64,000 bases of DNA, taken from Podarcis gaigeae. Lineage: Eukaryota. The notes beneath the pieces were generated by a model that did no database searches, had not been told where the DNA came from, and worked only from the letters and a program-made list of their open reading frames with translations. A program made the position numbers and the translations under genes. Below, one piece after another: positions 1 to 53,904 of this stretch (positions are counted from its first letter, which is position 1; the number at the start of each line of letters is the position of its first letter). The stretch lies in the NCBI GenBank assembly GCA_964106915.2, contig OZ066919.1; one strand, given 5' to 3'.

Positions 1-440
1 AGCTTGCAGGCTAAGATGCCAACGTTCGATCTACGATGCTTGGCCTTTCGAGGATTTCCCCCTTGTAAGTTCTGAACACTGCTGAAATAAAACTTTTAAA
101 AACTGGATGAATTTATAATGCAATATTTTCTCTCTCCCCTGCCACCTGACCCGCCTTTGGCCTGTGACAATTCTTTCTCAGTTTTTGCTAACAATGCATT
201 CCAGAGAGCATGAGACGTACAACAGGAACTCAGCTGTCGAAAGGCACAGAGCTGCCTTTCTAACAAGCCTCGGTTTTCTGCCTGCCCCTCTCCGATTATA
301 TTTTTGTGCTCTCATGATTAGCTCCCGGTAGGAGCCAAGCTATGAATCTCTCCCCAGCCCTGGCTTTTTATTAGTATGGCCCATGCAGGTTTGGTGAGAT
401 GGAACAGCTATAACTCTGAGATGCTGAATAGGAAACCTTC

Positions 441-455
441 ATTTGCATGAAAATG
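441..455 (+). promoter_or_regulatory. Octamer / near Oct-Sox composite motif in a repeat-free block
   Basis: ATTTGCATGAAAATG: a perfect octamer, one mismatch from ATTTGCATGACAATG. Confidence 0.3.
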
Positions 456-2680
456 AGGACGCCCTGCTGGCCACCGTGCCTGGATCAACTAATAAATATT
501 TGCAGCATTTTGTTCTCATTAAATATATGCAGACACGAGAAGCACAAACAATGTCTCCTTCTGGCACGCAGCCTCGGCGGAAGGCCTGGGGAAGGACACT
601 GTGCAACCAAGGAAAAGCTCTTCAGGAATAATTTAGAAGAAACAAAAATCCATTAGCTGGGCTGAGAGGAGTCAACCCACAACCCACAGAAACAGCTTTG
701 CCTAGTTTGGCTTTCAACCCCATCAGTCAGTGACAGCCCCACGTGCATTTGCTAGAACATGCCTACAAGATGTGGCTTTTGATATGGCATTGCAGACATG
801 GCTCTCAGATAAATTTATGGTGTCTCACTGAGTGCCAAAGTGGTTATGCAAACAGACTTTGCATCCCTTGAAAATGCAGGGCAGTGACCTCAGATCTGAA
901 AGGCTTCTGGCTCACACAGTAAGATCAGATGCTTGTAGCTGGATCGCTTTCTCCCTTTGCACTCTCGCTGTGGTCTCCTGTGGCTTGATCCTGTGAGCTG
1001 CTGCACTGAAGTAGATCTGACTCATGAGAGCTTGAGCTGTGATCCTGTTGTGGTTTGTGTTGTATTGTGGACAAATAAAAAAAGGGTTCAACCTTACTTG
1101 GATAGCACATTCATTTTCCCCTACCATGAAAATAGATACGGAAGATTATAGAAAATAGATTATGGAAAACGATATGTTATCCTGTTGGTTAAGATTAAAA
1201 ATAGCAAACACATTCTCTGAGTACTTATGCTTATGCAGGCAGCATGGCCCCTTCCACACACAAGAGGGAGGTGTCATCAGCCTTAGAGAACTCCCCAATC
1301 TTTGCAGAAGCGCATATCATGTTTAGGGGGAAATAATGTGGGGAGTGGGCAGCCCGAAACAGCCCAATGCAGACTGAGTGTGCTCTGTGGCCATGGAGTG
1401 CTGACTGACTGTTGGAAGGGGAATAGAAAACCAGGAGGTGGGGGATATAACAGAACATCCTGGAATTGGACATGGCTAGCTGGATGAAACCCTGAGCAGA
1501 AGTACTCTATACTGCAGGACTCTGTTGCAGGTCCCACTTATATTTCATAAACTACCAATAAAATGGCATATTATGATGTCCACTAAAGACTCCAGGAAGT
1601 CTGAAAATGCTACAGAGACAGATCTGGTTGGTAGTACTTTTTCCACTCTGCGCTCCAGTAATTACTTGTCAGTTTTCAGATTTGAATAGACACTGGCCAT
1701 ATTCATTCTTCCTCATTAGCGGCTTGGCTCTTCACAATGACTAATCATTGATGAGCAATCAAGATTATGTAGAAATGCAGCTTACACCTACGTCCTAGGA
1801 TGGATGTTGAGACAAGTATTCTGCCTGTGTGGATGTGTGGAATAAGAGTGAGTCTGGCTGACAAGGGGCAAGAAATTTGAGTTTTTGCAGCTGGCTAGGG
1901 AAAAAGGCAAGCTGGGAAGGCTGCTGTTACTTCCAAGGACAAATGCTGTTTCATTGTAAGTGCTTCCTTTCTGTGTGCCAACCTGCACCTTGGTTTCATT
2001 GCTAGATTAATCAATTAAAATTTTACTTGATCAATCCATGGAAGCCATTTTTAGTCAGTGGGGACACATTTTAATCAATAAGGTCATTTCCTGCACTGGC
2101 TCAAGAAGTCACATCCAAATGTTGTATTAATATTCAATGTATCCCTCAATTATGAAAGAATTCAATGACAACTTATTATGCAACTAATATTCTTTAATAG
2201 GTTGACAGTCCTACAAAAGTGGGAAATGGATTAAAACGTACTCATCCCTATGCAGAATCTGGGAATGGCATGATGAATGTCTACCAGTGGCTGCTTATCT
2301 TTATATGAGTGTCTCATAACGTTGCACATATCCCTTAAGAGGGCCCAAGTAAATGTTGCAGACAGGCAAAAGGTCAACAGGGGCGGAATATAGTGAACAG
2401 TATTCTTTACACTCAAGTCAATCTCAGTGTGGTAGCTGTCATCTAGGTTGATGCATCTATAAGCTATGAATGCATGAGTCTTTAAAAATGGATGTGGAAA
2501 GCCTGACTCTGTTGCTGGGCAGTAAGAGATTCATATGCATCCTCGCAAATACCTTGCACGGTGCAGCCCATTCTTCATGGGAGCTTTACCTAGAAGGCAG
2601 TGCACTGTTCACATTTCTTTCGGTGACAGACTGTGCTTTGGGGATATGGACACACATAGCTTTTCAAGGCACATCCGTCA

Positions 2681-2710
2681 GCACACACACACACACATGC
2701 ACACACACAC
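2681..2710. repeat. (CA)n microsatellite, interrupted
   Basis: Direct reading. Confidence 0.9.
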
Positions 2711-3964
2711 TTTCTTTTCTTTAATAGCTTTTAATAATTAAGTCTAGCTGAGAAGCTTTGATTGCATTATACACTTAGTGGGTTAATTAGAAACCTCTAA
2801 ATAAGTTGCAAACTGGTTCCTCCGGACTCGGCCCATTGGTCATTCCCCCAGCTAAAATGCTTGATTCTCTGGAGGGCTCGGGTTTGAGAATTGAATGGAA
2901 GTAATTGCTACCAATAAGTAAGACTACAAAGTTAAGTAATTTAATTTTGCCCCCTCCCTCTTCCCCAAACCCCCAGGAACAGCTGTGTAACACTATCAAT
3001 AAAAATCCCTTTAAAAGGTTAAGTGGGTGTTCTATTGGAAATGCTTAGAATCAGGGGAAATCCAGTAAAGATGTTTAGCAGAGTGATAAGGTTCTCATTG
3101 AATGAATGTTCTCCCTCACCCATCAAAGTCTTCTTTGTGATTGCTTGCATGTCTTCCATGTATACCCATGCAGCTAACTTTTCCTTCTTGGAGGGCTCTG
3201 CTTCCTCCCAAGAATGCTCGTCTCCCCTATTTGTATTATTGGCAGCACAAGAAGAGATATTTGCAAAGCAATGGGAGGTGGCTGGCTTTGGAGCCTGTCC
3301 TACTCATTGCTTATGATGATTAGCTAGTCAACTGAGATCTCACAAGGTTCTGCAGCATTTGTGAGATCTTGGCAGCTCCAATCTTGGGAGACCTGGGATT
3401 CTGGGTTTCCCTGGAGTCAGGGCATTCAAATGGGAGCAACAGCACCAGGTGGGAAGTTGTGTCATGGAAAGCCAGGACAAACCACCAAGCGGAGCAAGGA
3501 GCTAGGTAGCAATCACAACTCTCCCCTCCCCTGTTATTGCTCCCATTTTAACCAACATTATAGCAGTCAATTTCGGGGGGCGGGGGGCAGGGAATCAAAG
3601 TTGTGGCCATTTAGCTCCAGCACTCCTTAGCTGCCACATAGAAGATGCACATGAGAAAAAACTCCTCAACTCACTTCTCCACCTTGAAACCAGCAATGCT
3701 TTTGGCTCAATCTCCTTATCAATGAAGCATGCTCAAAGATTGGCTTTTATTAACTGACTCCTTGCTAGAGCTTTCTGCAAGTCCTGCTGAGCTGCAGGCA
3801 GTTTAAAGTTCCTTTAACTGTCAAGCTTATTGCGCCTACCTCTATGATCACAACTGCCTGCCAAGTTGCTTCTTTTAAATTGGCCACCTGTAATGAAGCC
3901 TGGGAGTTTAGTTGCCTTTCGTGCAGGGGATGTTTTCTTTTAAAAGGTAATCAGTTGTTGTTTT

Positions 3965-4130
3965 TACATGTGTATCTTTCACTTCCTTCATAGAGCTCAG
4001 AGTGGTGTTTTAGCTTCACAGCACCCCCTGAGATAGACAAGCTGAGAGATAGAGAGCTGCATAGCAAGAAGTCCTACTAAGATTAATAACTTGACAGGGG
4101 TTGCATCTGGGTCTCCCAATCTATGCTCAA
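3965..4130 (-). mobile_element. Degraded MIR/Squam3-like SINE
   Basis: Weak similarity to 56455-56682 (GAGCTCAGAGTGG, TCACAGCACCCCCTGAGATAG, GCTGAGAGA). Confidence 0.4.
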
Positions 4131-5136
4131 CATCTTAGCAGAATTCAAGTCAGTCCACTATCCATCCAGGTAACTGAACCTTTTTTTTTTTGCCAATTGT
4201 GTCAGGGTATTTTGCAGTTGATGGGCATTGATGTCCTAGCCTCAGCTCCCCCAGTGAATTGTATTATTGATAATACCTCATGAAGCCAATGCAGAGTACA
4301 GGGCAGGAATCATCACTCTTGCTCTGGATGGTTTAACACGTTCACCTTTCTCCATGCTCCCCACACTTCTGTTGGCACCTTGTGAAAGCTTTCACAAAAA
4401 GCTTTTCACTTTTCCATTCTATATTGGCTCTCTCTTAAGTCCCAAACTACCTACCATTTCATAATCACTCTACAATGCATCCAACTGCTCGCTCTCTCTG
4501 CTATCAATAACATCTGCTCTTGCTTAATTGTATCAGAACACCTGACAAATACTCCATTTCCTCAATCTCTCCTAATATTCCATTCCTAAGCCATGCTTGA
4601 ACTCTCCTTATTACATAGTAGGGACTGTTCCTTCCAGGCACTGCAGGAGATAATAAAAAAAATGAAGCGCTTGTAGTATTTTCATGCTGTTAAGCCCAAC
4701 ATGTTATTTTAGGCCAGGGTTTCTTAAAATTGGATGGCAGGTCCCCAAACTGCAACAATGAAAACAACAGCAATTGTTGCGTGTTGAGGTCCCCAATCCA
4801 CCCCCCAAAATAACTCACAACGGACACGTAATTTTTGTTTAAGATTTTTGGCATGATTTTGGCCACAACTTTATTAAAATACAAACTGTGAGTGGTTGTT
4901 TAGGCATTGGTTAAGACTATCTGTCCCCCCGCCTGGGGACAGAACTGACTTCCGGGCACCACCGAAAGACAGTGCGGGGGAAAGCAAGTCGGGGAAGAAT
5001 TGGAGCTGAGATACAGACCCTCAACTCTCACCCGCCTGCTCCCCGAAGGCTTGCCGGCCCTAGTCCCATTCCAGGGATTGGACGAAAAGATGGCAAGCCC
5101 CAGGATTCCTTTAACGGAATTCCCTTTCCGCAGCAA

Positions 5137-5208
5137 CCATGGAGGGGCAGGCCCAGCCTATCCTGAACCCCTCCATGGAGGGGTAGGCCCAGCCTATCCT
5201 AAACCCCT
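5137..5208. repeat. 36-bp tandem duplication inside copy A
   Basis: CCATGGAGGGG(C/T)AGGCCCAGCCTATCCT(G/A)AACCCCT x2 with 2 mismatches. Confidence 0.95.
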
Positions 5209-5271
5209 CCTCCACCAGATTTATAACCAATGCCTAACCACAACCTTACAAGTTGTGACGATTTGCTACGC

Positions 5272-5324
5272 AGTAGGCAAAAACCACCCAGCCAGCCAAT
5301 TTGCCAGGTGGAAAAATTCCTACC
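5272..5324 (-). ncRNA. Predicted ENE-like RNA element (U-rich internal loop between two helices), copy A
   Basis: Minus-strand RNA GGUAGG-AAUUUUU-CCACCUGGC-(AAAUUGGCUG)-GCUGGGUGG-UUUUUG-CCUACU. The layout matches the KSHV PAN ENE. Confidence 0.55.
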
Positions 5325-5653
5325 AGGCCCCTGCTCAAAGGCAGACAACCCCATGACAGGCATAGCAAGGTCAATGCAACAACCCCTTATTCTAGGGCGG
5401 GTGGGCGGGTGATCCGTTGCACGCAGCAAAAGAGAAAGTACAAGGCTGCGTGCAGAGTATTTAAACCTTTTACCCCTCCCACCAAAATTGCAACATAACT
5501 TTTGCCCCAGCAACTCGGCAATCCAATCAATGCCCCCTAGCCATCTTGGAGAACTTACCCAGCAACAAAGGGGTGGCTCAGTAGACCCCACCGCAACACG
5601 TGCTCTCCCTGAAGGAGAACACGCTTTGTCCTATATCTGCTGCATACAAAGAT

Positions 5654-5669
5654 CCAGCAGATGGCAGCA
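5654..5669 (+). promoter_or_regulatory. Candidate CTCF site
   Basis: CCAGCAGATGGCAGCA fits the CTCF core consensus CCASYAGRKGGCRS. Motif match only. Confidence 0.45.
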
Positions 5670-6825
5670 TGGAATGTTTTTGTGTGTTATATATTCCATT
5701 TTGTAAATAGATTTGATGCAGTGTTCAAAAGCATTTTCCTGAAATACAGCACTTTATCCAGAAGAAAGCTGAAAGTAAGCACAGATATCCTGATATCTTA
5801 TAGTTTTAAGTGACTTGGTTAAACATAAGGTGATCTAGTCCCATTGGAGTAAACTCCAATAGTTTTTGGCAAACACTGGGGTTTCCTTGCAATGGAAATT
5901 AGCTTTAAGTCCTTATAATTATATATGGATTACTATCTATGGGTTGGGCATGAGATAGATGGGTGGATGTGCTGCAGTTGGTGGACATCTGGCCCATAGG
6001 TCTTTAAAAGGATATTTCCCCCTTTGTTGTTTGGATTCAATGTCTGTGATACCAAACGCATCCCTATGCCATGTGATTTCTTTTTGTAGAAGCTGTAATA
6101 TCACTACTTTTTTGATAAGATTAGGGATATGGCTGGTATTTTGCTGGGTTCTAGACAAGGGGAAACTAGCATTTCCATGCGAAGGCAGTTGGGGTCCCTG
6201 TGCATCAGCCCTCATTGAAATCTTGCCACTTGCTATCCTTCATCACACAGAAAACACTAATAGTATTGCCGTGTCTCCACTTGCTCTTGCTTGTGAGATA
6301 TTAATGTGAAAGATAATATATTGGCCAGAATCAATACTTTTCCTGACTTAGTAAAGATCACCATCCATCAGTCCCTTCTTTCATTTGATAAAATCCTCTT
6401 ATGTCACTTTTACTTAGACTGATGAGATCACAGTGGCCCTTTTGTTTCATGATCAATGGAGCCAAGATGAAATATTGTCCTATAAATTAGCACCTCTGGA
6501 TCAAGACTATGAGATTCCCCCAATGGCTGCCAAGAGGACTCACCAAACATCATAATAAAGCACAGCACAGTCTAATGAGTTAATTAATTTAGAGCTGGAA
6601 TTTGCTGCACTAACACATGCTGGGAATTAGCAATATAATATCCAAACAATATACCATGAACTCTGTTTGGTGGTTCCTCAAGAATCTTGAGTCAAGATGT
6701 ACAGACTTTAGTCCAAATTATTCCTACACACAGAGGTCAACTAAATATGATGATGATGAAACACAGGTTACCAAATCAGTTTGTTTTCTCTCTCTTATAA
6801 TATGAAGGTAAAACCTAGAAGGCAT

Positions 6826-7662
6826 TTGCGTGGGCAGGCGGAGTCCCCCAAACCCTGGGTGGCCCCCGTGTGGAATAACGACACAATACAATGTGCTATG
6901 GGATTGAAATTGACCACACCTTTATTATGTTTCAGATGTGGGTAGATCTTGGCTCAGGCATTGGACGTTCATCCCTCCCAGTCCCCCGCCGGGGACCTGG
7001 GGAACATCAGGATTATTCAGTTTGTGGGGGGGATGGGCTGGCTCTGGAGAACATATGTTCAAGCAGAGAGAGCCCGCCCCCATTACGCCGTCATCACAGG
7101 GGAGAGCAATGACAACCTCTAGGTGTACGGCCAAAGCCTCCCCTCAAACAACCCCTTTAACAGGGAACCCTGGTATCGCCGCCACAAAGAGGAGGGGGGG
7201 CATGGGTCATTGCTGCATGCCCCCCCCCATTTAGGGAAGATAAACTAAAGGATTCTGCCCAAGGCCTGATACCACCAAAGTTGTGACGTTTTGCTATGGG
7301 AAAGGCAAACCTGCCAATGCAGGAAAATTCCATTCCGGCTCTTCAACAGCGACCTTGACCTAGCAGCGCCCGCGTACCTGTGGAGAAAAGGTTAACCTGC
7401 AAAAGAAGCCTTAACTGAGGGTGGGTAGGGTGGGAGAAGCTCTGGAGCCAACTGACAATTCCCAGGTAAGATCCTCCGCCTATTGTGTGGGCAGGTGTTC
7501 CCTCCCCCTACCTGGCCTGATCACCTTGGCAACGCCTCCACAGGTGGGATTGGGCAACTGGCTGAGGTAGGTGGAGACCTCCAGGTATCCCACCTGGGGA
7601 AGGCGAAGCCAAGCCTGTGCTAATGGTGCCTCATAGGGTCCAGGGGGCTGCGTGCGACCCCC
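6826..7662 (-). mobile_element. GC-rich LTR-like non-coding retroelement unit, copy B (diverged relative of copy A)
   Basis: Shares with copy A, in the same order: TTGCGTG end, CCACA(A/C)CTTTATT poly(A) signal block (AATAAA on minus at 6921-6926), AGGCATTGG, GTCCCC-CGCC-GGGGAC hairpin, CCTTTAAC, AAGTTGTGACG.TTTGCTA, AGGCAAA...GGAAAATTCC and GGGYGGG tracts. Right boundary approximate. Confidence 0.65.
7299..7336 (-). ncRNA. Predicted ENE-like RNA element, copy B
   Basis: Minus-strand RNA GGAAUGG-AAUUUU-CCUGC-(AUUG)-GCAGG-UUUG-CCUUUCC. The stem sequences differ from copy A but pairing is kept. Confidence 0.5.
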
Positions 7663-10600
7663 ATTTAATGTGGGGAGTGGTCATTGTAGCAGATATCTGT
7701 GGGGCGCTTAACCCACTAATTCTTTCTTGCAAAACTCACCCCAAATTTCTTTGCACTGATTACCCCTCAGTCAGACTCTGAAACTAGAAGTGAGTTCAGT
7801 TGGGGGGGGGGGGGAAGGAATTGTATTGGAGAGCAGATGGGGAGAAAATAATTGCAAGAAATAATTGACAGATCTGGAGGAGTTGAGTCACTGCCATCCA
7901 CTCAGAAGTGCTCTTGCCCAATCAACATGCAGTTAAGACTATGTTTTTGCTGAGCAAATGTCTAGTTTAAGTTTCAGTGCATTCCATAGCACATCCCACC
8001 AAAGGATATATTGGAAGCCAAAGAAGAGAAAGATGCTGCCTCTCAGCAGTGAATCGGGTGGGGGGTAGTGTTGCAGACACATGATGCTTCCACATACCAG
8101 CCCCAGCACTGTCCCTTCCTGTCCCTCTTGCTCAGTCCCTGAAGCACCCACCCTCCTGCCCTTGAATGGCAGTAGAGGTAAGAGGGGAAGATTTTTTTGT
8201 CTGTAGTCTTGTTGGCCATGGGAAACTTGGGTCCCCTTCCCACACTCTATTCTTTATATGGGGGAAGGCAGAGTAGTATGAGAGTGGTGAGCCCCCTGAG
8301 ACACCCATAGCATAGCTCTTGATGGGGAGGCTGCTGGCTGCCTCCCACCTCTGCCAGAACCTGCACAGTTTGAAATGGCTGCAGATCTCATTTAATAAAA
8401 TGGTGGCCCTAGTTATTCATTATCCATCTCTCTCCTCTTTCTTCTGGATATGGGAACAGTAGGGATCCTTCCAAAATCTGATTGGATATTTCCACCTGAT
8501 ATTACCTGCTCTTGATTCTCAGATTTGTGATGGCTTCTCGCCAAAATTATGCTAAAACAAATATTTCCGGGTAAATATGATCTGAATAGTTTCTATACAA
8601 GTGTGGCTGAACCCACATCCTTTGATGACTTCTCTAGAACAACTCTGGTTCATAGTGGGATTGTGTGTGTGTTATGGAAAACTGGAACTTGAACAAACTC
8701 TGCAGAATCAAAACCCAGGATTTAAATTTGGACTGCATTAGCACAAACAGCTGTAATCAAATGATTTTATATACAGTTACAACTGTAGTCACATATGTTT
8801 GGTCTGATTTTCAGAATTTTTTTCTGTGCAAAAATGCTAGCAATGAGCTAGTCTGGTATTTTCTAAAGTTTCCTAAAGTTCTGTACAAGTTTCATACTTT
8901 TAAAGTTACAGATAATTTCAGTGCAGCTAGCAGACACACACTTACACACCCACGTTGTGAGCTATTTGGTGAGAAGTAGTTATTGTGCATACAACAAATG
9001 CCAGAGGAAATTACAGAGCTCCTTCTTTTAAACATAGAAAATAACCTCAATCTCTTGAAGTGAGAAAGCAATAAATACAATGTGGCCCATAAAGTTGTAC
9101 ACCATAGGGTAAAGTACATCCTGAGAATAGATACCAATGGATGGATGCTGCTGTTTTCTAGCTAATATGCCCCTGTTGCATCATTTGCTGTTCAGTGACA
9201 TTGAAGTATCTTGAAACAACCAGCCTGGATTGAATGATGAATGATGCAGCGCAGCTCGAAGGTTCAGCTCTTTCTTTTTTTAGCCTGGCAATTTGGCAGG
9301 GATTTGTTCCAAACAAGTTTACCGCTGTTCCCAAAGTGCACCTGTCAGGGTTCAAGGTAAACAAAACTTTGCTGTTGATTCTTTTTGTACATAAACCACA
9401 GGACTTCACCTTCTTTCTGGCTACATAGCTGCCACTTCACTGTAGCAGAGGGCTAAGAGCTACAGAAACTTTGGTACCAAGAACTTTGAGCAAGGGTGCC
9501 CATGTAGCCAGGCATCCCAGCATGGAATGTTTGTCCCATCCCTGTCACTGCCCACACTGTGCCCTCCCTATCTGAGCTGCTGCCGCTGCCACAGATTGTG
9601 TGCCCAAATAAATCTAGGGACCCTATTCTTCAAGCATTACCAGAGCCCGTCACAGGGAAATATGCAACTGCTCCACTTCCATAATCAGGACTTTGTGTTC
9701 CTCGGCTGACAGCAAAGGAGGAGGTAAATAGCTGCTTATTGCTTGGCTTCTCATTCCTCTGAAAAAGAGATAGCGGTGAAGTGATGAGTTACACACCTGT
9801 CTTATTGAAGGTGAGAGCTTGTAGTGTGATTCTAACATTTTCTCCCTTTCTTATTCTGAAGGTTATTCTTGCAACTTTAATTGAGATGATATATTAATAG
9901 CTGAAATATCTTTCACATTTTTCAGTGGATTTTCCAGAGCCTATCATTATTAATGTGTCAACAGGTCTTCTCTTTCTCTTCAGCTCCAGATGGTGGCCTG
10001 AGGTATTTTTATTTTTATTACTTTAAAATTAGGTTGTTCATAAAATAATTATTATTAATAATAATGTTGACTCTTCCGTTAACACCACTGCTTCAAATAA
10101 ACTCAGCACCTTTCTTCCAATGTTGTTAATAAGGTAGCAGTGAAACTATAAGAATGAGGGGGCGGGCAGAATGCCTTGGTCTGTGTTGTCAGAATAAAGA
10201 AGGAGGTATCATACCCCCACCCAACTTTTTTATCCAAACTATTCTGGACTCATTGCCTCTTTACCCATACACAATGAAGTCAGGTTTAGATTAGGGATGT
10301 GTGATGGATTTCATTTCTGTGAATTCTGATGCAAACTACCATGATCCACTGATGTGCAGATTGAAACAAAATTATAATTTGGATTTTGAACATCTCCAAA
10401 TTGTGTGGTGCAATGCTTGGCTAAAGAATATATGTGCCAAAATGCATGCTTTAGGATACAACCTGTTTTAAAAGGTTTACACTGAGATAATGTGTACATT
10501 CCTTTAGTAGTGCACCTGGTGCCATTCTAGTACAGGCAACTCCCCATTCAAGTGGGGGTTACATTCCAGGTCTCCACACGCATAAACAAAACTCACATAA

Positions 10601-10901
10601 GTGGAGAGCTTGCTGCAGTACATATAGCTTCCTGCCCAACAGCTGCTAAGTGGGGTAGTACAGCAGTAGCAAGAGCTTCCACATGCCATTTTGGAGCACT
10701 TGTTGTTTTGGCTCACTGCTGTTCCCTTCGGGCTCTGGGGAGGGTCTCCTTGTGAGCCACAAGACTTTCCAGCTCTCTCCCACCATTTCAGGTTAGAACT
10801 GAATTATTTATTTATTCCCCAGTGCCACACATATACACGGTCACCTGCGAGTCAATAGCATATAAATTGTGGGTGCCTTCTAGGAAATTATGAGTGTCTT
10901 T

Positions 10902-11330
10902 TAGGGATGGATGAATCTGTCAACTTTGGACAAATTAGAAACAGGGAGAAATACCAATCTTAAATTCAGTTTACCACATTTCTACATCACATTGTGATTT
11001 TTTAAAAAAATCATCATTTTTAATTCATCAGCATTGTAGTGCATATTCTAATATACTCAATTTAAATGTAACTTTGCCTATTCTATACATTTTTGCAAGC
11101 AGCATTTTAATGTATTTTTAATGAATTGACACAGTTTTATGCACTGTTTCTCCCAACGTTCCCATTTTTGTACATATGCTTTAGTTGGAAAGCTGTTCTG
11201 CAAAAATTTGGAGAAGTGTGAATTTTCAGGAAGGCCATAACACCAAGTGCCTTTCTGGTCTCAGGTCTTGATCTTGGTGAGTAAATGCATTCATGAATAG
11301 GTCAAAATGCTGCTTATTTTGAATTTTCTT
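10902..11330. mobile_element. Old AT-rich non-autonomous DNA-transposon-like repeat
   Basis: Starts TAGGGATGGATGAATCTGTC and is colinear with 46835-47222. A related fragment lies at about 10292-10490. Confidence 0.5.
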
Positions 11331-11395
11331 CAGCCATAACAAGAAGCTACATCATGGACTACCATGTCCTCCAGGATTTGAGATCTCACCTAGAT

Positions 11396-11536
11396 CAGAT
11401 GTGGGGAACCTGTGGCCCTCCTGATGTTGCTGGACTCCCACTCTCATCAGCTCCAGCCAGCCAGCCAGCTCAATAGTCAGGGATAATGGGAGTTGTAGTC
11501 CAATAACATCTGAAAGGCCGTAAATTCCGTAGTCCC
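11396..11536. mobile_element. ~140-bp palindromic hAT-like MITE (lizard GGACTACAACTCCCA family)
   Basis: Inverted arms GATGTTGCTGGACT...GGGAGTTGTAGTCCAATAACATC. Further copies at 19089-19203, 29298-29421, 45179-45292 and 50645-50772. Confidence 0.75.
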
Positions 11537-12875
11537 AATGCAGAAGCTTGATAAGGAGCTGGAGCGCGGTGGCTCTCACTCAAGTAATGCCAGGAAGAAC
11601 AGGTGTTGTGCCTGTGTTGCTACAATAGACTAACAGAGAATACTTATTTAGTTTTAAATAAGTTTACCATTGCTGCTGGTCTCTGTAAGTCCCTCAAGGC
11701 CACCATACAATTTACTGTAGATGGAAAACTTGGTCATAGCTTGGGATAACCTGGTGGCAACTTATTTTGAGTGCAATCTTTCTGTTTTGGACAGAAATAT
11801 AACTGCACAGGGCAGCAAATGAACCACACTGCTGTATTGTCATAGCATTAGCTCAACAGCAAGCCAAGAGATATGTGTCATTATGTTAATGCACTTGTCT
11901 GCCTCAGAACAGTGTCCCCAGCACTCCTATCCATCATGTAAATGCCTTGCAGAAACAGTCTTCTGGATTCTCTTTGTGTACTTGCTGTCACTGCTATGGG
12001 AAGTAATGGCCTGAAATCATTCACACCATTAGTTTTAATGGATTAGAACTGTGTCATTTAAGGTAAGGTACAGGTGCGAGTGGGCTTGCAGAGTGCATCT
12101 CTACCCACATGCCACTGGCTAGTGTTACTCTGAGGGTTAAAAAGAAAATGAAAAGAAGAAGAAGACATTTTCCTCATCACCTTGGGAATGAAAGTGATGC
12201 ATTTTCCAACTGTCCCCACTGGAGGTCAGTGGAACATTGTTTACCATTGTTTGCTAGAACAAAGAAACTGCAAAACAGTGACATTTCAAGGGTGAATGTA
12301 TATCTTTTTCAGTGTCTTTGTTATTGTACATCTACAGATAATTCTGTAAATTGTCCATAATGCCTAGTTTTAATGGTCACCATTCCATGCTTTATGGGAC
12401 ATTAAATCAGTGTTTGTTTTATTGGCATAATTGCTTATTTAGATGCACAGAAACTGCCAGAAAAAGGTGCCCCCTTGTGCTCTCTAGGTGCTTGGGGTAT
12501 AACTTAATAATATGCAAAGCACAGTGGTGTGTTTTAAAATAATTCTCTAAAGGCAGAAAATGCCTGGGCTCCTGCCCCCTATATTCGGTACCGTCTTCCC
12601 AACTAAGCCTGGTGCTCTAGAAAGAATGTCTCTCATGGCTGCATCAACTCTGTATCAGCAGTGTACTTGAAAATGGTGCTAATCATTGATGCAATAGCAT
12701 TGCAGTACTTAATGACTGGAGCCAGGCAGTTCAGGGTGCAATCCTGTGGAGAGCATCTGAAACACAAATAAAAATAAATTTGCTGAAGGAGGCAACATCA
12801 GGCACTGTAGGTGGCAGTGCCAGACATCATGAAAAAAACAAAGTAATGAAATAAAACTATAAAACAGGAGCTGTA

Positions 12876-13285
12876 GGGTACATTCAGAGATGGGGAATAT
12901 TGCATTTTCCTGGTTATCATGCTAGCACCTCTGTACCTGTTGTGTTATGGAGATGTGGCTTTTGGACTGATATAAAAGCACATTTTGCTACATTCCATTC
13001 AGACCAGTGGGTGTGGTGTGGTACAACAGTGACTGTCACTGGATGTCGTTATTCCTCCATCGTCTCCACACATGTGTGCTTCTGTTCCTCCATCATTCAG
13101 CCAGGAAAATGGCAGGAAAGAACTGTGCGAACTCTCATGATTTTCCAGGTTAATGGGCTTGCAAATGGATTTATTTATGGAGTCAAATAACATGAATATC
13201 AGCACCAATGGAGGTCATTTTTACATCACATGAAAGCTCAAATATAATGTGGAAATTAACACTTAGGGAAACGTCTTGAAAATGG
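12876..13285 (+). mobile_element. Non-autonomous DNA transposon remnant, paralog of 24199-24949
   Basis: Colinear with 24199-24949 (CATTCAGA.ATGGG, TGTGGCTTTT.GACTGATAT, TTTTCCAGGTTAA, TCAAATAACATGAA, AAGCTCAAATAT). It lacks the SINE insertion and the right TIR. Confidence 0.75.
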
Positions 13286-13312
13286 AATAAACTGCCATTT
13301 ATTCCTAAATCA

Positions 13313-13460
13313 GTGGTAGTGCTTTGCAATTCCTGGCACCTCCAGATAGAACTGGGAATCTCTTCTATCTGAAATGCAGGAGAGCCCCCGCTGATCAAAA
13401 TCTGAGCTAGATGGTTGAGTGGTAGGACTTCTAGAAATAGGGCAGTTTCCTATGTTCCTG
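13313..13460 (+). mobile_element. Degraded tRNA-derived SINE (same family as 43818-44405)
   Basis: CCTGGCACCTCCAG...CTGAGCTAGATGG...GGCAGTTTCCTATGTTCCT. Another copy at about 41005-41185. Confidence 0.6.
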
Positions 13461-14404
13461 TTAGGAACTATTTGTGTATCTGAGGGGTGACTGATGCCAT
13501 TTCTTTTTTCCTGGCTAAGTAACCATCAAGATTTCTCCTTGTGCAACAGGACTCTTTCCTACCCTGTACATGTACGCACACACGCACGCGCACACACATA
13601 TTGTTCTCTCCTCATCTGCTCTGGGGGATGTTCAGATGGAGAAGAGGGGTGAATCCTGTGGCACATGTGGAATTCCTTTCAATGGTGGGACTGTTACTTA
13701 GGGCTGTGTCGAATACAGTCCTCAGTAAATAATGTCTGATATCAGTGGTGTGGGACCATGCCATGGTAAAGCAGCTTCCATATTCCTGTAGCCAGGCATG
13801 AACTGAACCTCAGCAATAAAACACTTCTCCATACCTTCTAAGTCAAGATGTCAACATGGGGAGTAGGAGAACTGAACTGTCTTGTTTCGGCTCATGATGA
13901 CTCGCTTATGAAACAGTAAAGGTTTAAAGATGAAGAAGCCTTAGAACAGGGACTAGCGATAACATTAAGCAAATATCCCATTTGAATATGCTAGCAGAAG
14001 AAATGTGAATTTAGGCTATAGTGTGTTTGTATACTAAATGTATTTGAAACATAGCAAGCATTTTGTTCCTTTTCTGTGTGGTTTGCAAGTAGAAATTAAT
14101 TAACTCCATTGATGATAATGAGGTTACTTCAGGTTTACGTCAACATTATGGCGAACAGAAGGTAGAATTGTTCAGCAAATGGTTTGAAAGTCTTTCTTGT
14201 ACATGAATAAGCATTGAATGCACATTAGAAAGGAATGAAAGCCATTGTTATTGCTATTATTTAACACAGCTGTCTCTTATTTCCACTACATAATTCTTGT
14301 CTAAATGTACATAACGTCTCCTGCTTGCGAGCTGATAGAGCTCAGGTGACTGACTATGACTCACCAAGCAAAACAGGATTGCTGACATGAGAGGAAAGAA
14401 CAGT

Positions 14405-48280: not shown

Positions 48281-51200
48281 TATTGCTTTATTGCTTTAAT
48301 ATGCTGTAAACCACTTTGAGATTTTTATTTTTATTAAAAATATAAAGCTGTATAGAAATTTAAAAATAAACAAATAAATGCTTAAAATTTCCTCACAGTG
48401 TAAGGCACAGTGAAGTGTGTTGTGGTGACTGACTTGAGTAGGGTGGCTTAATTGTTTGTGGATTGTAATCTATCACAAGGGTGATAGATTACATTATTCT
48501 CAGGATACTTCTCAAACATTATGCCATCCACTCTTGAGTGTCTAGAAGTAAAGTCTTCAAAGGTATAAAGCCCTTGAGCTTAGATGATACCAAATCATCA
48601 GTGGCAGGGGAGGTTGCTGAGGGATGTATGGGCTTCAAGAAGATCTCTTCTGATTGTCAGTGATTTTTACCTTTCCAGAATACAAATGGTAAATATGTGA
48701 AACACAGCGACAAATCAATTTTTTCTTATTTTCAAGTGAAATTTCAAGCATTTTAAAACCACCCATTGATTACAATTAGGGCCAGATGTTGTTTTATGGA
48801 CTCAAAGAGATCAATACATAAATATTGCTTCATGATGTGAGGTGACATTGCAGTTCATGTCAGATCATTCAGATGATACTGAGCTGTATATGCCCTAACC
48901 TGAAACACATTACTCAGAAGTTAACCCCACTGATTTCACTGTAGTAAGTTTAATATGGTGGTCTATGTCAAATACATTGTGGAAATTTTATCTCTATGAA
49001 CGCACACAAATAGGAACACACACATATACCTGCAACTCAGAATTGTGTCTCTGTAATCAGGACTCAGTATACCTGCTTTGCCACTGGAAGTTCAGGAACA
49101 GCTTCCCTCTGCAAACCATTTAATGTGTGTGGAACTGTACTCCATTGAAATTCATCGTAGAATCAAATACACCATAGACTATAGTTCCTTTTCCCCACCT
49201 AGATGGGTGAGAACCAGCTTGACTTTAGAGTAGGCAAATTTGGCTTTCAGGAATCTGATGTACATACTGAGCATCTGTGTCCAAGTCCTGTGTATCTCTA
49301 GCCTAATTCTATTTAGCAGTTGAGAACTTTGACTATTTAATTTTGAGCTTTCGTATCATTGGGCAGGCAGTGTCGGGGTCCTGCAGAGGTACTGCCTTTG
49401 AGGGATGTTCAGGATTGGTAATTCTGCTTAGTTCTCACAAATATATGTGAGGCTGGACTGCTGCAATGTGACAATGGGTTCAATAAAACAGTGCCAACAT
49501 CTTCACATTAAACTGAAAGTGGGCGTCTGCAATGACAGAATTCTTGCTGAGGTCTGGGTTTCTAAGGAATATCACAAAGCTGCAGCCTTTTGAGTTTTTT
49601 CAAAATTGCTCTAAAATTAAGACTAGGAAGGAAGTGTGGGGAAAGAATACAGGCCTATACATTTTTGGAACTGAGCACTAAATCTTTCAGGGCAAATAAT
49701 GGATGCTGACAGTGCAAAGGCATTATTTGGTGCTGTTTGAAATTTGCCTGTCCTTGTTTTCCCACTCTGTGTCTCAGGGAGTTGAAAGCTATGAAAAGGC
49801 AATTACATTTGCTGAATGATTAGTGGGAGATGTGACATTTGTGTATGTCGAAAATGTTTAACTGCATTAACCTTTGCAAAATTTACACTGACACCTTAAA
49901 AATTATACATCTTGTGCGCCACTTGAAAAATCTGAAATGCCCTCCAATGTAAAGCTTATTTACATTTGCTTTTTTACAAAATAAATGGCCCTCATATTTG
50001 AAGAGAGTTTTGCCAGAAAGTTGAGAGTGCTGAAGCAAGGAAAGTCAAGTGTATGAAGGTGCTTGGTTGCCTCCCAATTGGAAAAGTGAAGTTGAAAAGC
50101 AAACAAAACCCGCACAGAATGCAAATTGCAAGAAGAAGACAAGTTCAAATACAAAATGCATAAGGTATTTAAGTCTCAAGGAAGCAGCTTGCAAACTTTT
50201 ATAGACCTTTACTTTAAAAAATAATAATACACAGGATGTCAGTAGATTTTCAAAATGTTTTCCCCAAATATATTCAAAGTGCAAACAGGCAATTAAAATA
50301 CTCTATGCCACTCTTCTTTTCATTGCCACTTCCCCCAGCATGCTCAGTTTCTGCTGGGACTGCTCACCTAACCAGGTTTCTTTCTTCTCTAAAGAGTCTT
50401 CCTCACTGGCGTCAATGTGAATGCTCAGCTGATTCAACTCCATGCCTCTTGTGCTTCACTCCACTGAAATCTGATTTGTTATGAGACAGACTCCGGTGGA
50501 ATGAAGGACAACAGAATCCATGGAACTTTCTTTGTGTACCTTGGTGACTGGGGCAAACAAACATGTCATGAGAAAAACAGTCAGTAGCAGACACAGGTTG
50601 AGTGAAAATTAACACTGGAAACAACATTAAAGGCAGTATTTGTACAGCTCTCCCCCCTCAACCTGATACCCCCCAGATGTTTTAGATGGAAACTCCCATC
50701 AGCTTGGCCAATGATCATGGATGATGCACATTTCTGCCCAAGGCTTCTGAAGGGCAGCAAGTTGGGGAAGATTTGTATCAGGCCCCCTTATTGTTTACTT
50801 AATATACTTTATGCTTGGATACCCCCCCCCATTTCAAACTATTCCTCCAGTACATCATCTTTTTGTTTAGCACACAGGGACATTGAAGAGGATTTGTTTT
50901 TCTCTGTATCCTCATCCTCTTTAGATTTATCCTTTTGTCATGAACTCTATCAGCAGGCAAGAAATTCTGAAGCACTTAAAGGATTATCCGTATGCTATCT
51001 TTGCAGCAGAGATCATTACAATATCTCTGGGAAAGCTTGCGGTTATTATTCATTTGTTGGACTTGTCGTCTAGTTTTGAGGATCAGATGCTTCACATCTG
51101 TGCATTTGTCCTCACATTTATAATAATTCAGAAATACCGACTTTTGAAATGGATGAACATCTGTAGGCAAATAGTTAGATAACACTTAGTATAAACAAGC

Positions 51201-53904
51201 CCCCAGCAAAACCTAATGGTTTATTTCTAATCTTGCCTAGAATCTTTTCTCTCTTAGGGTAAATTCAGGTGGCTGATGTTTTCACACTACTGTATCTCAT
51301 TTTCAGTCACAATAGGTAGGGGTCCACATGGACATCTGTTGCCTAAAGGGTCTAGCATGTAATGGATCCTGTTACTTCTATACTTTCAACAAGCTACCAA
51401 AATGTCACACAAGAATTCAGTGTACAATGTAATAGACACAATGCAATAGAAAGGGCAGGCCACAGGCTTATGCAAACAGAGTGATATGGACAGAAGTACT
51501 GGGATAGTTATGGACTGAAAGCAACACCTACTTTATTGTTTTCACAATCTGCTATTGTGGTAGATAATTTGTTAGGACAGGGGTTGGTTTTGTTTTGTGG
51601 ATGTGCCTGAGGAACCCACTGGAGATAAAACTGCTGTTTTATTACACCCTGTGGAAATACAGAAGAAAATGTGGGTATGACCCCAAAGATCTTACAGGGA
51701 AAAGTAATCAAAGGAAGAAAATTCACGAACAAGGGAACATTCAAAGTTTTCGCAGACATAGAAGGGTAATTCATACAGTGAAGTTTAAAATGGCGCTATT
51801 GAAATGAATTTCAAAGAGAGCAAATCATCATTTTCATCCTTTGTGGGAAGACGAGCTTGCTTTATTTCACAGCTTGTTGACTTAATTGTGGAAACTTTTA
51901 TTTAACATTCACTCTCGGATGTTGAATAGCAGCTTCCATTTAAAGGTGCATCTCTATTGATTTTCCAAATAATACAAATAAAAGAATAGAAAAGCACAAG
52001 AAAGGGTGGGACCAAAAAAGTGCATGAAAAAATGAGTTAAAATAAATGTCAGAAAAATCACCATGAGAAAAGAAATAATCATTTCCACTTTACATAGGAG
52101 GAAAGAAAACCTTATATCTAAGAATACCTTAACTAACATTTTATAATTCCCAATCATTGATTTAGCAGTCCAGTCCAGTCCTCTATATTTATTTGTTTAA
52201 TTTCATAAAAATGATAGACCATTTGATTGTAAAAACAACAAACCTCAAAGTGGTTCTCTTAGAGGTGAGCCTCACTGAATTTAATGGGACTTGCTCCTAA
52301 GTAAGTGTACATAGGATTGCCGTCTAATTTACATCCAAAATCTAGCTGTGAAGCAAAAAAGTGATGCTCCTACCATTTCATAGAGATCAAACTGAGAAGC
52401 TGAGAAAACAAACTCAAATGTACTATAGAGCATTCATTCCAGAGCATAGGACAGAATTCATTTTTCCTAAATCTCAAGAAATTGCATCAACATCCTATAC
52501 ACATTTACTTCCAAGTACATGTGTATAGGATTGGGTTCTTTTTAAATGTTTCCAAATAATGTTCCTTGTAGTGTCTAATAAATGGGTCCAAGATCTATGA
52601 AGCCAATTTAAGCCCTATACTGACAGAGTTCCTTCTTAAATTTTTAAATCATTAAGAAATAAATGTTTGGCATTTACTTAGAAATACATCCCTAGTGATG
52701 CATAATTCTGAGTATAGGTGGATAGGATTGAGTTGCAAAAATGTTTAGAAAAGTAGCTTTGATATAAACAGATTGTGTTGTGAATATTCCCCTGCAGAGA
52801 TAATGAGATCTTGTGATAGCGAGCAAAGATTCTAAATCCTGAGTTACTAAACCACAGAAGTGCTGATACAGGTCTTCAAAATGCTTGAAGGCTTTTCTTT
52901 TAATGTACAGACCTGCTTTTGCAAGTCCTCTCCCTTGGGTATGTTAAGACTTGTTTGTAGGTTTTTGGGAACTTCATAAGAACAAAAGGAACCTGTCTGC
53001 TGAAATTCCTCCCTGCAAACCTGACTTCTTTGTAATGCATTTTCATTAGGCATGTTTCTACGGGTCTTGGGTGAGATCAGCCCCCAGACTCTCAGCTTCC
53101 TTCCCAAAGTGTTAACCCTTTCCAAGGCCAAGCCTTTAGGGTGCATGAAACTTGAATAGAATGGAAACCAAGCTGAGGACATTAGTAATGCTCCCAGCCA
53201 ATAACTACCTAATAAGCAAACTGCAGGTTACCAAAGTGATAATGGCTGCAAGAATACAATGGGTGTTGTGGCGATGTGATGAAGCACATTCCACAGAAGG
53301 AGCTGACATCCAAAATTCCTTTTTGCAGGATCATTAAACAAGTGTACTAAACCATACCTGTTTGATAGACCTTAATCAGAGCTGTTTTAGACAATCTTGC
53401 ATTAGTTTCCAAGAGAGTTTTGAAAAGAGATGGTAAAGAACTATTACTATATACATTTGCATCCAAATTTCAAATCAAATTCTATCGGAAAGGTCTGAGT
53501 GAACTTAAAAACTGTCCTCTGAATGATCTTCAATGTTTCCTGGGCACATTAATGCAAGCTATATCCTAATTTATTAGGCAGAGCTACCATATGCTCAAAG
53601 AAAGGAAGACAGCTTTCTTCCCAAAAGCTGTCTTTTGTGCTCAGAGAGGACAATATTTCATGTGCTGAACTTTCAGTTGTTTCCATGTGTCTGAAATCAG
53701 TGCTACGGATACATATTCTCCTGATGAGAGGCCTTTCCAGTGTCATCCCCTAAAATAAGCCCCACAAGGTTGTCCATTTCCTTGTAGAAATGAATGCATG
53801 GAGGGGTGAAGCCGTGTTTGCTACCTGACCCCAACCTCTAACTGTTATGTGTTCAAGGCACCATTTGCACAAGAGCATATGCTCCTATCAGAGATGTTTG
53901 ACAT

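What the first reader, a model, noticed from the sequence alone, without database searches (positions are those of the whole stretch)
5272..7336. ENE-like (poly(A) triple-helix) RNA module conserved by covariation in two diverged lizard retroelements
Seen: on the minus strand both elements fold as lower helix / AA-U4-5 / upper helix / U3-5-G / lower helix. Copy A (5272-5324) is GGUAGG-AAUUUUU-CCACC..GGUGG-UUUUUG-CCUACU. Copy B (7299-7336) is GGAAUGG-AAUUUU-CCUGC..GCAGG-UUUG-CCUUUCC. The stems differ but still pair (CCACC/GGUGG vs CCUGC/GCAGG), while the loop signature is kept. G-U wobbles and the AAUAAA orientation both favour the minus strand. Established: a U-rich internal loop between two short helices is the ENE of KSHV PAN RNA and MALAT1/NEAT1; it captures A-rich or poly(A) RNA in a U-A-U triple helix and blocks decay. 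ENEs are known from plant and fungal TEs. Inference: a squamate retroelement family carries an ENE that stabilises a non-coding or genomic transcript. I do not know of this being described for these elements, but could not search.
Basis: partly seen in the sequence, partly recalled or inferred. Interest (0 to 1): 0.9.

Follow-up and report, generated by a model that had tools for sequence, protein, structure and literature searches.

The report
Conserved U-loop hairpin; ENE role unproven
Two old, diverged copies of a roughly 500-600-base non-coding unit share a real, conserved hairpin with a U-rich internal loop upstream of a conserved poly(A) signal, but only one copy has U tracts long enough for a poly(A)-clamping ENE, and nothing here shows that the units are retroelements.

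Summary
The minus strand folds better. The two copies are true paralogs (nhmmer E=5e-12) over about 600 nt.

Only two blocks are conserved:
- Block I: the hairpin, a 19-nt box and arm 1.
- Block II: arm 2 and an AAUAAAG-UGUGG-CA poly(A) signal.

The two blocks pair with each other in both copies (19/19 pairs). This closes a variable GC-rich domain of about 300 nt and puts the hairpin next to the predicted poly(A) site.

The lower stem of the hairpin keeps its pairing through three double substitutions. The loop letters and the flanking G-C pairs do not vary. The hairpin therefore looks like a real conserved element, most likely RNA on the minus strand.

The ENE reading stays open:
- Copy A fits a strict ENE descriptor (U5/U5; 0.025 expected per window).
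- Copy B has only U4/U3 and a broken lower stem.
- There is no Rfam match.
- In copy A the hairpin loses to other folds once flanking sequence is included.
- Only two sequences are available.

There is no reverse transcriptase, no target-site duplication and no third copy, so "retroelement family" is unverified. The decisive step is to collect genomic copies and run expression and oligo(A) tests.

The parts
5271..5325 (-). Copy A hairpin. Lower stem 5325-5319 with 5277-5271. 5' loop AAUUUUU 5318-5312. Upper stem 5311-5303 with 5292-5284. 3' loop UUUUUG 5283-5278.
   Evidence: It is the only strict U5/U5 descriptor match in the window (0.025 expected). Probability is 0.87-1.0 in isolation but 0.00-0.22 in element context.
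7299..7336 (-). Copy B hairpin. Lower stem 7336-7330 with 7305-7299, containing a U.U mismatch. 5' loop AAUUUU 7329-7324. Upper stem 7323-7319 with 7314-7310. 3' loop UUUG 7309-7306.
   Evidence: It fails the contiguous-stem descriptor. Probability is 0.74-0.98 in mature-RNA context.
5250..5268 (-). Copy A 19-nt conserved box (UAGCAAAUCGUCACAACUU). Its 3' half pairs with the sequence just after AAUAAA.
   Evidence: only 2 hits in the window, 0.04 expected.
7278..7296 (-). Copy B 19-nt conserved box, 18/19 identical to copy A.
5224..5256 (-). Copy A arm 1 of the long-range helix. Core 5237-5224. TATAAA starts at 5225 and overlaps the arm's 3' end.
   Evidence: inverted repeat I1: 33 nt, 76% complementary, with a perfect 14-mer.
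4881..4913 (-). Copy A arm 2 of the long-range helix (core 4913-4900).
4859..4876 (-). Copy A conserved poly(A) signal context UAAUAAAGUUGUGGCCAA. AAUAAA is at 4875-4870. The conserved CA, the predicted cleavage site, is about 10 nt downstream.
   Evidence: Use of the site is inferred, not shown.
7259..7268 (-). Copy B arm 1 core (CAGGCCUUGG).
   Evidence: U-A in A becomes C-G in B at one pair.
6955..6964 (-). Copy B arm 2 core (CCAAUGCCUG).
6910..6927 (-). Copy B conserved poly(A) signal context (AAUAAA at 6926-6921).
4785..5410 (-). Copy A, full span of detectable homology with copy B. Secure from about 5345 to about 4850.
   Evidence: nhmmer E=4.8e-12; posterior probability is high only in Blocks I and II.
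6840..7435 (-). Copy B, full span of detectable homology with copy A. Secure from about 7345 to about 6905.

Best explanation
A and B are two diverged paralogous copies of a non-coding unit of about 500-600 nt. The unit reads on the minus strand and ends at a conserved polyadenylation signal.

Selection has kept two blocks:
- A 5' block: the stem-loop with a U-rich internal loop, a 19-nt box and arm 1.
- A 3' block: arm 2 and AAUAAAG-UGUGG-CA.

The two blocks pair with each other. This closes a variable, GC-rich, highly structured domain of about 300 nt, partly sequesters the AAUAAA region, and brings the stem-loop to within a few nucleotides of the predicted cleavage site.

The hairpin is therefore a real cis-element of an RNA 3'-end module that most likely acts on 3'-end processing or stability. 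It is ENE-like in shape. An ENE-type clamp on the nascent poly(A) tail is the leading specific mechanism for copy A. It is not conserved in copy B by known standards.

Shown: homology, the conserved blocks, conserved pairing and the compensatory changes. Inferred: transcription of the minus strand, use of the poly(A) site, and any effect on RNA stability.
For: - Homology: E=4.8e-12. Identity is 54% of aligned columns and is concentrated in columns 21-120 and 421-500.
- Long-range helix: 19/19 pairs in both copies, with one U-A to C-G double change, one G-C to G.U change and one conserved U.G. Slid controls give 4-9 pairs kept in both copies.
- Hairpin lower stem: 3 double-compensatory changes. 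Loop letters GGAAUUUU and UUUGCC are identical in both copies.
- The two G-C pairs on each side of the loop do not vary.
- The AAUAAA context is conserved at 17 of 18 positions, with a conserved CA about 10 nt downstream.
- The hairpins fold better on the minus strand.
- The whole-unit folds are unusually stable: z -6.2 for A and -2.8 for B.
Against: - Only two sequences are available, so no statistics on covariation are possible. My rough binomial for the lower stem is p about 0.07.
- Whole-unit folding z-scores are the same on the plus strand (-6.8 and -2.4). The inverted-repeat architecture is therefore strand-neutral, and the strand preference rests on a few wobble pairs and on the AAUAAA.
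- There are no expression data.
- In copy A the hairpin is out-competed in context.
- The conserved letters can also be read as DNA motifs.
Confidence: 0.4

Rival explanations
1. One reading: the hairpin is a true single-domain ENE. Its two U tracts clamp the transcript's poly(A) tail in a U.A-U triple helix and block deadenylation and decay. Here a long-range helix helps by tethering the poly(A) site next to the hairpin.
For: - Copy A has U5/U5 with C-G and G-C closing pairs, and it passes a strict descriptor (1 observed against 0.025 expected per window).
- The loop letters and flanking G-C pairs do not vary while the lower stem covaries.
- A conserved AAUAAA lies on the same strand. The conserved Block I-Block II helix would place the tail 2-4 nt from the junction that carries the hairpin.
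- ENEs inside TE LTRs and 3' regions are known, and some have been predicted in stickleback retroviruses (PMC13541005, PMC7583470).
Against: - Copy B has U4/U3, so at most 3 triples, and only 2 bp of lower stem next to the loop.
- AA and G spacers separate the U tracts from the lower stem.
- No Rfam match at E<=10.
- In mature-RNA context with an A30 tail the hairpin probability is 0.01-0.22 in A.
- At 0.025 strict matches per 64 kb, a genome of about 2 Gb would hold several hundred by chance.
- N=2, and there are no binding or expression data.
Confidence: 0.2
2. Block I is conserved as DNA, not RNA. It would be a cluster of transcription-factor sites in an LTR-like or host promoter/enhancer, and the hairpin would be a by-product of palindromic sites.
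For: Motifs seen by eye in the sequence and not tested:
- GGAATTTTCC in B fits the broad Rel/kappaB pattern GGRRNNYYCC. A has an 11-bp version.
- A CGTCA (CRE half-site) lies in the box.
- An ATTGG (inverted CCAAT) lies in arm 1.
- TATAAA starts at 5225 in A.
- GC/CACCC boxes lie at 5409-5395 and 7434-7419.

Both copies also sit in islands richer in GC and CpG (CpG o/e 0.4-0.57 against 0.18).
Against: - Binding sites do not predict the three compensatory double changes in the lower stem, or conserved complementarity between blocks about 300 nt apart.
- B lacks the TATA box.
- The motif matches are short, made by eye, and were not tested with any matrix or shuffle.
Confidence: 0.2
3. The two copies are neutral relics: old copies of some repeat or local duplication whose inverted repeats arose at the DNA level. 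The ENE-like look of copy A is chance, and there is no present function.
For: - Strict ENE descriptors arise by chance at about 0.025 per window.
- Folding z-scores are strand-symmetric.
- T runs change length easily, which would explain U5/U5 against U4/U3.
- No known RNA family matches.
Against: - Conservation is in blocks, not uniform. One block is 18/19 identical and another 17/18, against about 54% overall.
- Pairing is kept through double substitutions.
- CpG is retained well above background.
Confidence: 0.15
4. A MALAT1-style mini-triplex formed in cis. The conserved GCAAA(A/U) directly 3' of the hairpin folds back, pairs with the 3' loop strand UUUG(C), and is contacted by the 5' U tract. 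This gives 3-4 base triples with a register-setting G-C pair.
For: - UUUGC and GCAAA are complementary and invariant in both copies.
- This pairing appears in the MFE fold of copy B.
- MALAT1-like triple-helix loci are known in anole lizards (Zhang 2017, cited in PMC10869381).
- In MALAT1 the U-rich loop is interrupted by G/C that pair with the A-rich tract (PMC7583470).
Against: - No tRNA-like element lies downstream: ARAGORN finds 0 genes and Rfam has no mascRNA-menRNA match at E<=10.
- Only 5-6 nt link the lower stem to the tract, which is tight for folding back over 6-7 bp (inference).
- The tract is internal, not a 3' end.
Confidence: 0.05

Closest known systems
KSHV PAN RNA ENE (single-domain ENE)
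   Same: - Stem-loop with a U-rich internal loop between two short helices.
- G-C pairs bracket the loop.
- It lies upstream of a poly(A) site on the same strand.
- Copy A offers 5+5 U, the number of U.A-U triples seen in the PAN crystal structure (PMC7583470).
   Different: - AA and G spacers sit between the U tracts and the lower stem.
- Copy B has only 4+3 U.
- The hairpin is about 400 nt from AAUAAA in sequence. A long-range helix would bring the two together; I know of no such helix for PAN (from memory).
- No functional data.
ENEs and double-domain ENEs of transposable elements (plant and fungal TEs such as TWIFB1 and Arabidopsis Evade; also predicted in slime mold and stickleback retroviruses)
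   Same: If the units are TE-derived, this would be a U-rich internal loop in the 3' part of a TE transcript, protecting a poly(A) tail. G-C pairs next to the U tracts are essential in Evade (PMC12501189) and do not vary here.
   Different: - TE identity is not shown here.
- This is a single domain, not the double domain typical of plant TEs.
- The U tracts in copy B are shorter.
- The adenosine triad and pocket motif described for dENEs were not looked for here (PMC13541005).
MALAT1 / MALAT1-like triple helix plus mascRNA loci (dozens reported in anole lizards, Zhang et al. 2017, seen only through citing papers)
   Same: - U-rich loop ending in G, with a complementary genomically encoded GCAAA tract just downstream.
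- A reported lizard precedent for dispersed triple-helix elements.
   Different: - No tRNA-like RNase P substrate.
- The tract is only 3-4 A long and is internal.
- A canonical AAUAAA is present instead.
Retroviral 3'-end/LTR structures that involve the poly(A) signal (HIV-1 poly(A) hairpin; HTLV-1 Rex-responsive element bridging AAUAAA and the cleavage site). Recalled from memory, not tested.
   Same: A long-range helix encloses a large structured domain and includes, or abuts, the AAUAAA.
   Different: - No LTR features were verified (no TG..CA ends with a target-site duplication, no primer-binding site, no gag/pol nearby).
- In HTLV-1 the AAUAAA lies upstream of the structure. Here it lies at the 3' side.

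Membership tests
ENE (single-domain, PAN type) | Stem-loop with an internal loop made of two U tracts long enough for about 5 consecutive U.A-U triples | tested here: inconclusive
   Copy A is U5/U5, which meets it. Copy B is U4/U3, which does not. The family-level state is unknown with two copies.
ENE (single-domain, PAN type) | G-C pairs immediately flanking the U-rich loop (the lower stem is used for A-minor contacts) | tested here: inconclusive
   Upper side: C-G and C-G sit directly next to the U tracts in both copies. Lower side: two invariant G-C pairs, but separated from the U tracts by AA (5' strand) and G (3' strand). B's third lower pair is U.U.
ENE (single-domain, PAN type) | Lies in the 3' part of a polyadenylated transcript, or upstream of an A-rich tract | tested here: inconclusive
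   A conserved AAUAAAG-UGUGG-CA lies about 400 nt downstream on the same strand in both copies, and a conserved helix brings it next to the hairpin. Transcription and cleavage were not observed.
ENE (single-domain, PAN type) | Match to a curated covariance model | tested here: not met
   No Rfam 15 family of any kind matches either hairpin at E<=10. I could not verify which ENE models Rfam 15 holds, so this is weak evidence.
ENE (single-domain, PAN type) | Statistically supported covariation of both stems across many homologs | not testable with these tools
   Only two copies are reachable. There is no third copy in the window. Viral and metagenome scans gave nothing or chance hits. The ORF-based protein search was empty.
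ENE (single-domain, PAN type) | Binds oligo(A) or the poly(A) tail and stabilises a reporter; abolished by U-to-C loop mutations | not testable with these tools
   Needs experiments.
MALAT1-like triple helix plus mascRNA | tRNA-like structure directly after the A-rich tract (RNase P processing) | tested here: not met
   ARAGORN finds 0 genes in the window. No mascRNA-menRNA match at E<=10.
MALAT1-like triple helix plus mascRNA | Genomically encoded A-rich tract complementary to U-rich motif 2, including the G/C interruption | tested here: inconclusive
   UUUG(C) and GCAAA(A/U) are complementary and conserved, but this gives only 3-4 A-U pairs, and the tract is internal.
LTR retroelement / retroelement family | Reverse transcriptase, gag, pol or other TE coding remnants associated with the copies | tested here: not met
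   No Pfam TE domain in 20 ORFs of 70 aa or more within 1-14000, or in the 61 ORFs of 75 aa or more in the rest of the window. The longest ORF in the window is 130 aa and has no homolog.
LTR retroelement / retroelement family | TG...CA termini with 4-6 bp target-site duplications, or a poly(A) tail plus target-site duplication | tested here: inconclusive
   No candidate for A. One 6-bp candidate for B (7592/6860), at chance level. The 8-9-nt flank repeats are also at chance level. The sequence after A's CA site is A-rich; B's is not.
LTR retroelement / retroelement family | Many dispersed copies in the genome | not testable with these tools
   No eukaryotic genome or repeat library is on hand. 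Within the window there are only two copies, 2 kb apart and in the same orientation.

The most novel reading that the evidence does not exclude
A vertebrate (squamate) non-coding unit carries a single-domain ENE. A conserved long-range helix tethers the ENE to the unit's own cleavage/polyadenylation site, so that the nascent poly(A) tail emerges right at the foot of the U-rich hairpin. This would be a pre-organised poly(A) clamp, intermediate between the PAN type (free tail) and the MALAT1 type (tethered A-tract).
Probability: 0.15. Interest if true: 0.65.

Novelty: new variant of a known kind. Interest (0 to 1): 0.3.

Why it matters
If the hairpin does clamp poly(A), it would extend ENE-type triple helices to a reptile repeat or non-coding RNA. 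So far, vertebrate cases outside MALAT1/NEAT1 are MALAT1-like loci and predicted stickleback retroviral ENEs.

It would also show a new arrangement, in which a long-range helix delivers the tail to the clamp.

If it does not, the locus is still a small example of a paralog pair with conserved loops, covarying stems and a structure that sequesters the poly(A) signal. That is worth one genome-wide look, but it is not remarkable on present evidence.

Tried and rejected
1. More copies in the window. blastn, nhmmer with one sequence and nhmmer with a profile found none beyond A and B. The flanks of A and B are not homologous.
2. Copies elsewhere.
   - The 130-aa ORF spanning hairpin A has no homolog in the protein collection.
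   - Two viral contigs pattern scans were empty.
   - The metagenome scan gave 54 loci that match only around the 17-mer seed, so they are chance hits. Two of these contigs are labelled human gut metagenome. I took none for human sequence, and none was used further.
3. Known RNA families. Only mir-205 elsewhere in the window. Nothing at the locus. No tRNA or tRNA-like gene.
4. LTR or retroposon boundaries from TG..CA ends plus a target-site duplication, or from flank repeats: at chance level.
5. TE protein remnants: none.
6. Strand assignment from whole-unit folding: uninformative, because z-scores are equal on both strands.
7. Primer-binding-site readings were rejected as too weak. TGGTGGAGG... 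was compared with tRNA-Ala and TTTGGGGGAC... with tRNA-Pro, both by eye and from memory.
8. Zhang 2017 and Tycowski 2016 are not held in the library. Their content is cited only through papers that describe them.

The consensus lines that the alignment tool prints were ignored.
Full report
**What is there.**

- Folded alone, each gives the described lower helix / AAU4-5 / upper helix / U3-5G / lower helix.
- A is -23.9 kcal/mol with z -2.4 against dinucleotide shuffles. B is -14.6 with z -1.7.
- The plus-strand versions are weaker (-14.4 and -12.7, z about -1), because several pairs are G.U wobbles.
- A's upper stem extends to 9 bp. B's lower stem is 4 bp + U.U + 2 bp.

**Are the two copies related?** Yes.

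- A 19-nt box directly 3' of each hairpin is 18/19 identical and occurs nowhere else in the window (0.04 expected).
- nhmmer with A alone finds B at E=4.8e-12, spanning A 5410-4785 and B 7435-6840.
- The similarity comes in blocks. Overall identity is 54% of aligned columns. Posterior probability is high only in two blocks, plus small islands such as GUUAAAGG and GGCGGGGG:
  - Block I: hairpin, box and arm 1 (A about 5330-5224, B about 7340-7250).
  - Block II: arm 2 plus UAAUAAAG-UGUGG-CAA (A 4913-4859, B 6964-6910).
- The roughly 300 nt in between cannot be aligned, but it is GC-rich in both copies.
- There is no third copy in the window, and the flanks are unrelated.
- Both copies lie in islands of higher GC and CpG (CpG o/e 0.4-0.57 against 0.18 for the window).

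**Pairing evidence.**

- In the plain MAFFT alignment, which was not fitted to any structure, the lower stem is paired at 7/7 columns in A and 6/7 in B.
- Three of its column pairs changed on both sides (U.G to G-C, G-C to A-U, U-A to A-U) and one changed on one side. Sliding the partner by 1-3 columns gives 0-1 such changes.
- The two G-C pairs on each side of the loop, and the loop letters (GGAAUUUU and UUUGCC), are identical in both copies.
MAFFT and nhmmer align B's GCAGG with a different GCUGG in A. They treat A's GGUGG as part of a 10-nt A-specific insertion that looks like a local duplication.
- With two sequences no significance test is valid. My rough binomial for the lower stem alone is about 0.07.

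Block I and Block II are complementary.

- GUCACAACUU in the box pairs with AAAG(U/G)UGUGG(C/U), which overlaps the end of AAUAAA.
- (U/C)AGGC-UUGG pairs with CCAA-GCCU(A/G).
- RNAalifold predicts this helix. All 19 pairs hold in both copies, with one U-A to C-G double change, one G-C to G.U change and one conserved U.G. Slid controls keep 4-9 pairs in both copies.
- In A the arms are a 33-nt inverted repeat containing a perfect 14-mer.
- The helix closes the variable domain. It would place the hairpin about 11 nt from one strand, and the conserved CA about 10 nt after AAUAAA (2-4 nt beyond the other strand) at the same junction.
- Whole-unit folds are unusually stable (A z -6.2, B z -2.8), but equally so on the plus strand (-6.8 and -2.4).
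- The architecture is therefore strand-neutral. The case for the minus strand rests on the wobble pairs and on the conserved AAUAAA context. AAUAAA alone is common, at 63-68 per strand in the window.

**Does it qualify as an ENE?**

[quoted passage not shown] G-C pairs next to the U tracts are essential, and ENEs usually lie near the 3' end (PMC13541005, PMC12501189). PAN forms five U.A-U triples plus three A-minor contacts. Four consecutive triples are the least reported to support a triple helix in the MALAT1 context (PMC7583470).

*How the copies compare.*

- Copy A (U5/U5; stems of 7 and 9 bp) is the only match in the window to a strict descriptor. That descriptor gives 0.025 matches per shuffled window (10 of 400 shuffles). 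This is rare locally, but implies several hundred chance matches in a genome of about 2 Gb.
- Copy B (U4/U3) can offer three triples at most and fails the descriptor.
- In both copies AA and G separate the U tracts from the lower stem.
- No Rfam family matches at E<=10, even when each hairpin is searched alone. I could not check which ENE models Rfam 15 contains.

*Stability in context.* I modelled a mature RNA ending at the conserved CA with an A30 tail. The hairpin then has probability 0.74-0.98 in B but only 0.01-0.22 in A. In A a GGAA/UUCC self-hairpin and other pairings compete.

So the copy with good U tracts has the less secure hairpin, and the copy with the secure hairpin has poor U tracts.

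**Is it a retroelement?** I found no evidence.

- The longest ORF in the 64 kb is 130 aa. It overlaps hairpin A and has no homolog.
- No ORF of 70 aa or more within 1-14000, or of 75 aa or more elsewhere in the window, hits a TE domain in Pfam.
- Searches for TG..CA ends with a target-site duplication, and for flank repeats, gave only chance-level candidates.
- The two copies are 2 kb apart in the same orientation. This fits an old local duplication of a constrained element as well as it fits two insertions from diverged subfamilies.
- Block-wise conservation fits either selection in a TE lineage or selection in place.
- 'Lizard' was not verified either. The only anchor is a mir-205 precursor at 50443-50516.

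**Rivals.**

- *DNA regulatory cluster.* The conserved letters of Block I can also be read as DNA motifs: a Rel/kappaB-like palindrome, a CGTCA half-site, an inverted CCAAT, a TATAAA in A only, and GC/CACCC boxes upstream. These were matched by eye and not tested. They do not explain the compensatory changes or the complementarity across 300 nt.
- *MALAT1-style cis mini-triplex.* This would use the invariant GCAAA just downstream. It is conceivable, but there is no tRNA-like element, and only 3-4 triples would form.
- *Neutral relic.* This is disfavoured by the block-wise conservation and by the retained pairing.

**Verdict.**

That hairpin is part of a larger conserved fold that involves the poly(A) signal.
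- The ENE function is possible for copy A, is not conserved by known criteria in copy B, and cannot be tested here. I put it at about 0.15-0.2.
- The retroelement label is unsupported.
- Precedents exist: TE ENEs in plants and fungi, predicted stickleback retroviral ENEs, and MALAT1-like loci in anole. Even if true, this would be a new variant of a known kind rather than a new kind.

Noticed in passing
window 50443-50516 (-): mir-205 microRNA precursor, Rfam RF00656, 92.5 bits, E=4e-22. It is the only Rfam match in the window above the gathering score.
   Followed up: no
window 5137-5208: A 36-nt unit repeated twice in tandem (94% identical) inside the variable domain of copy A. Copy B has only one diverged unit at the aligned place.
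   Followed up: partly
window 5454-5418 (-) and 5465-5458 (-): A perfect 10-bp hairpin with a 17-nt loop lies just 3' of a TATA-like TTTAAATA, upstream of hairpin A. It is present in copy A only. It could mark a promoter and leader hairpin, or be unrelated.
   Followed up: no
window 4650-5650 and 6750-7600: Both copies lie in islands of higher GC (0.5-0.59) and CpG o/e (0.4-0.57 against 0.18 for the window). Only 2 CpGs are at aligned positions in the two copies.
   Followed up: partly
window 7209-7229 and 7801-7821: Inverted repeat built on long C and G runs (21 nt, 76% complementary, 571 nt apart). One arm is the G9 run inside copy B.
   Followed up: no
window 52909-52964 (+): A second, loose match to the ENE-like descriptor (U4/U3; stems of 8 and 6 bp; 20-nt apical loop). 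It is at chance level (0.6 expected per window) and is not related to copies A and B.
   Followed up: partly
window about 5333 (-), about 7372 (-), about 5556-5550 (-): Splice-acceptor-like pyrimidine-CAG|G motifs lie just 5' of both hairpins, and a GGTAAGT donor-like motif lies upstream in A. The units might be terminal exons rather than repeats. Seen by eye only.
   Followed up: no
whole window: No ORF longer than 130 aa, no recognisable TE protein domain and almost no internal repeats in 64 kb. This is a gene-poor, repeat-poor stretch around mir-205.
   Followed up: partly
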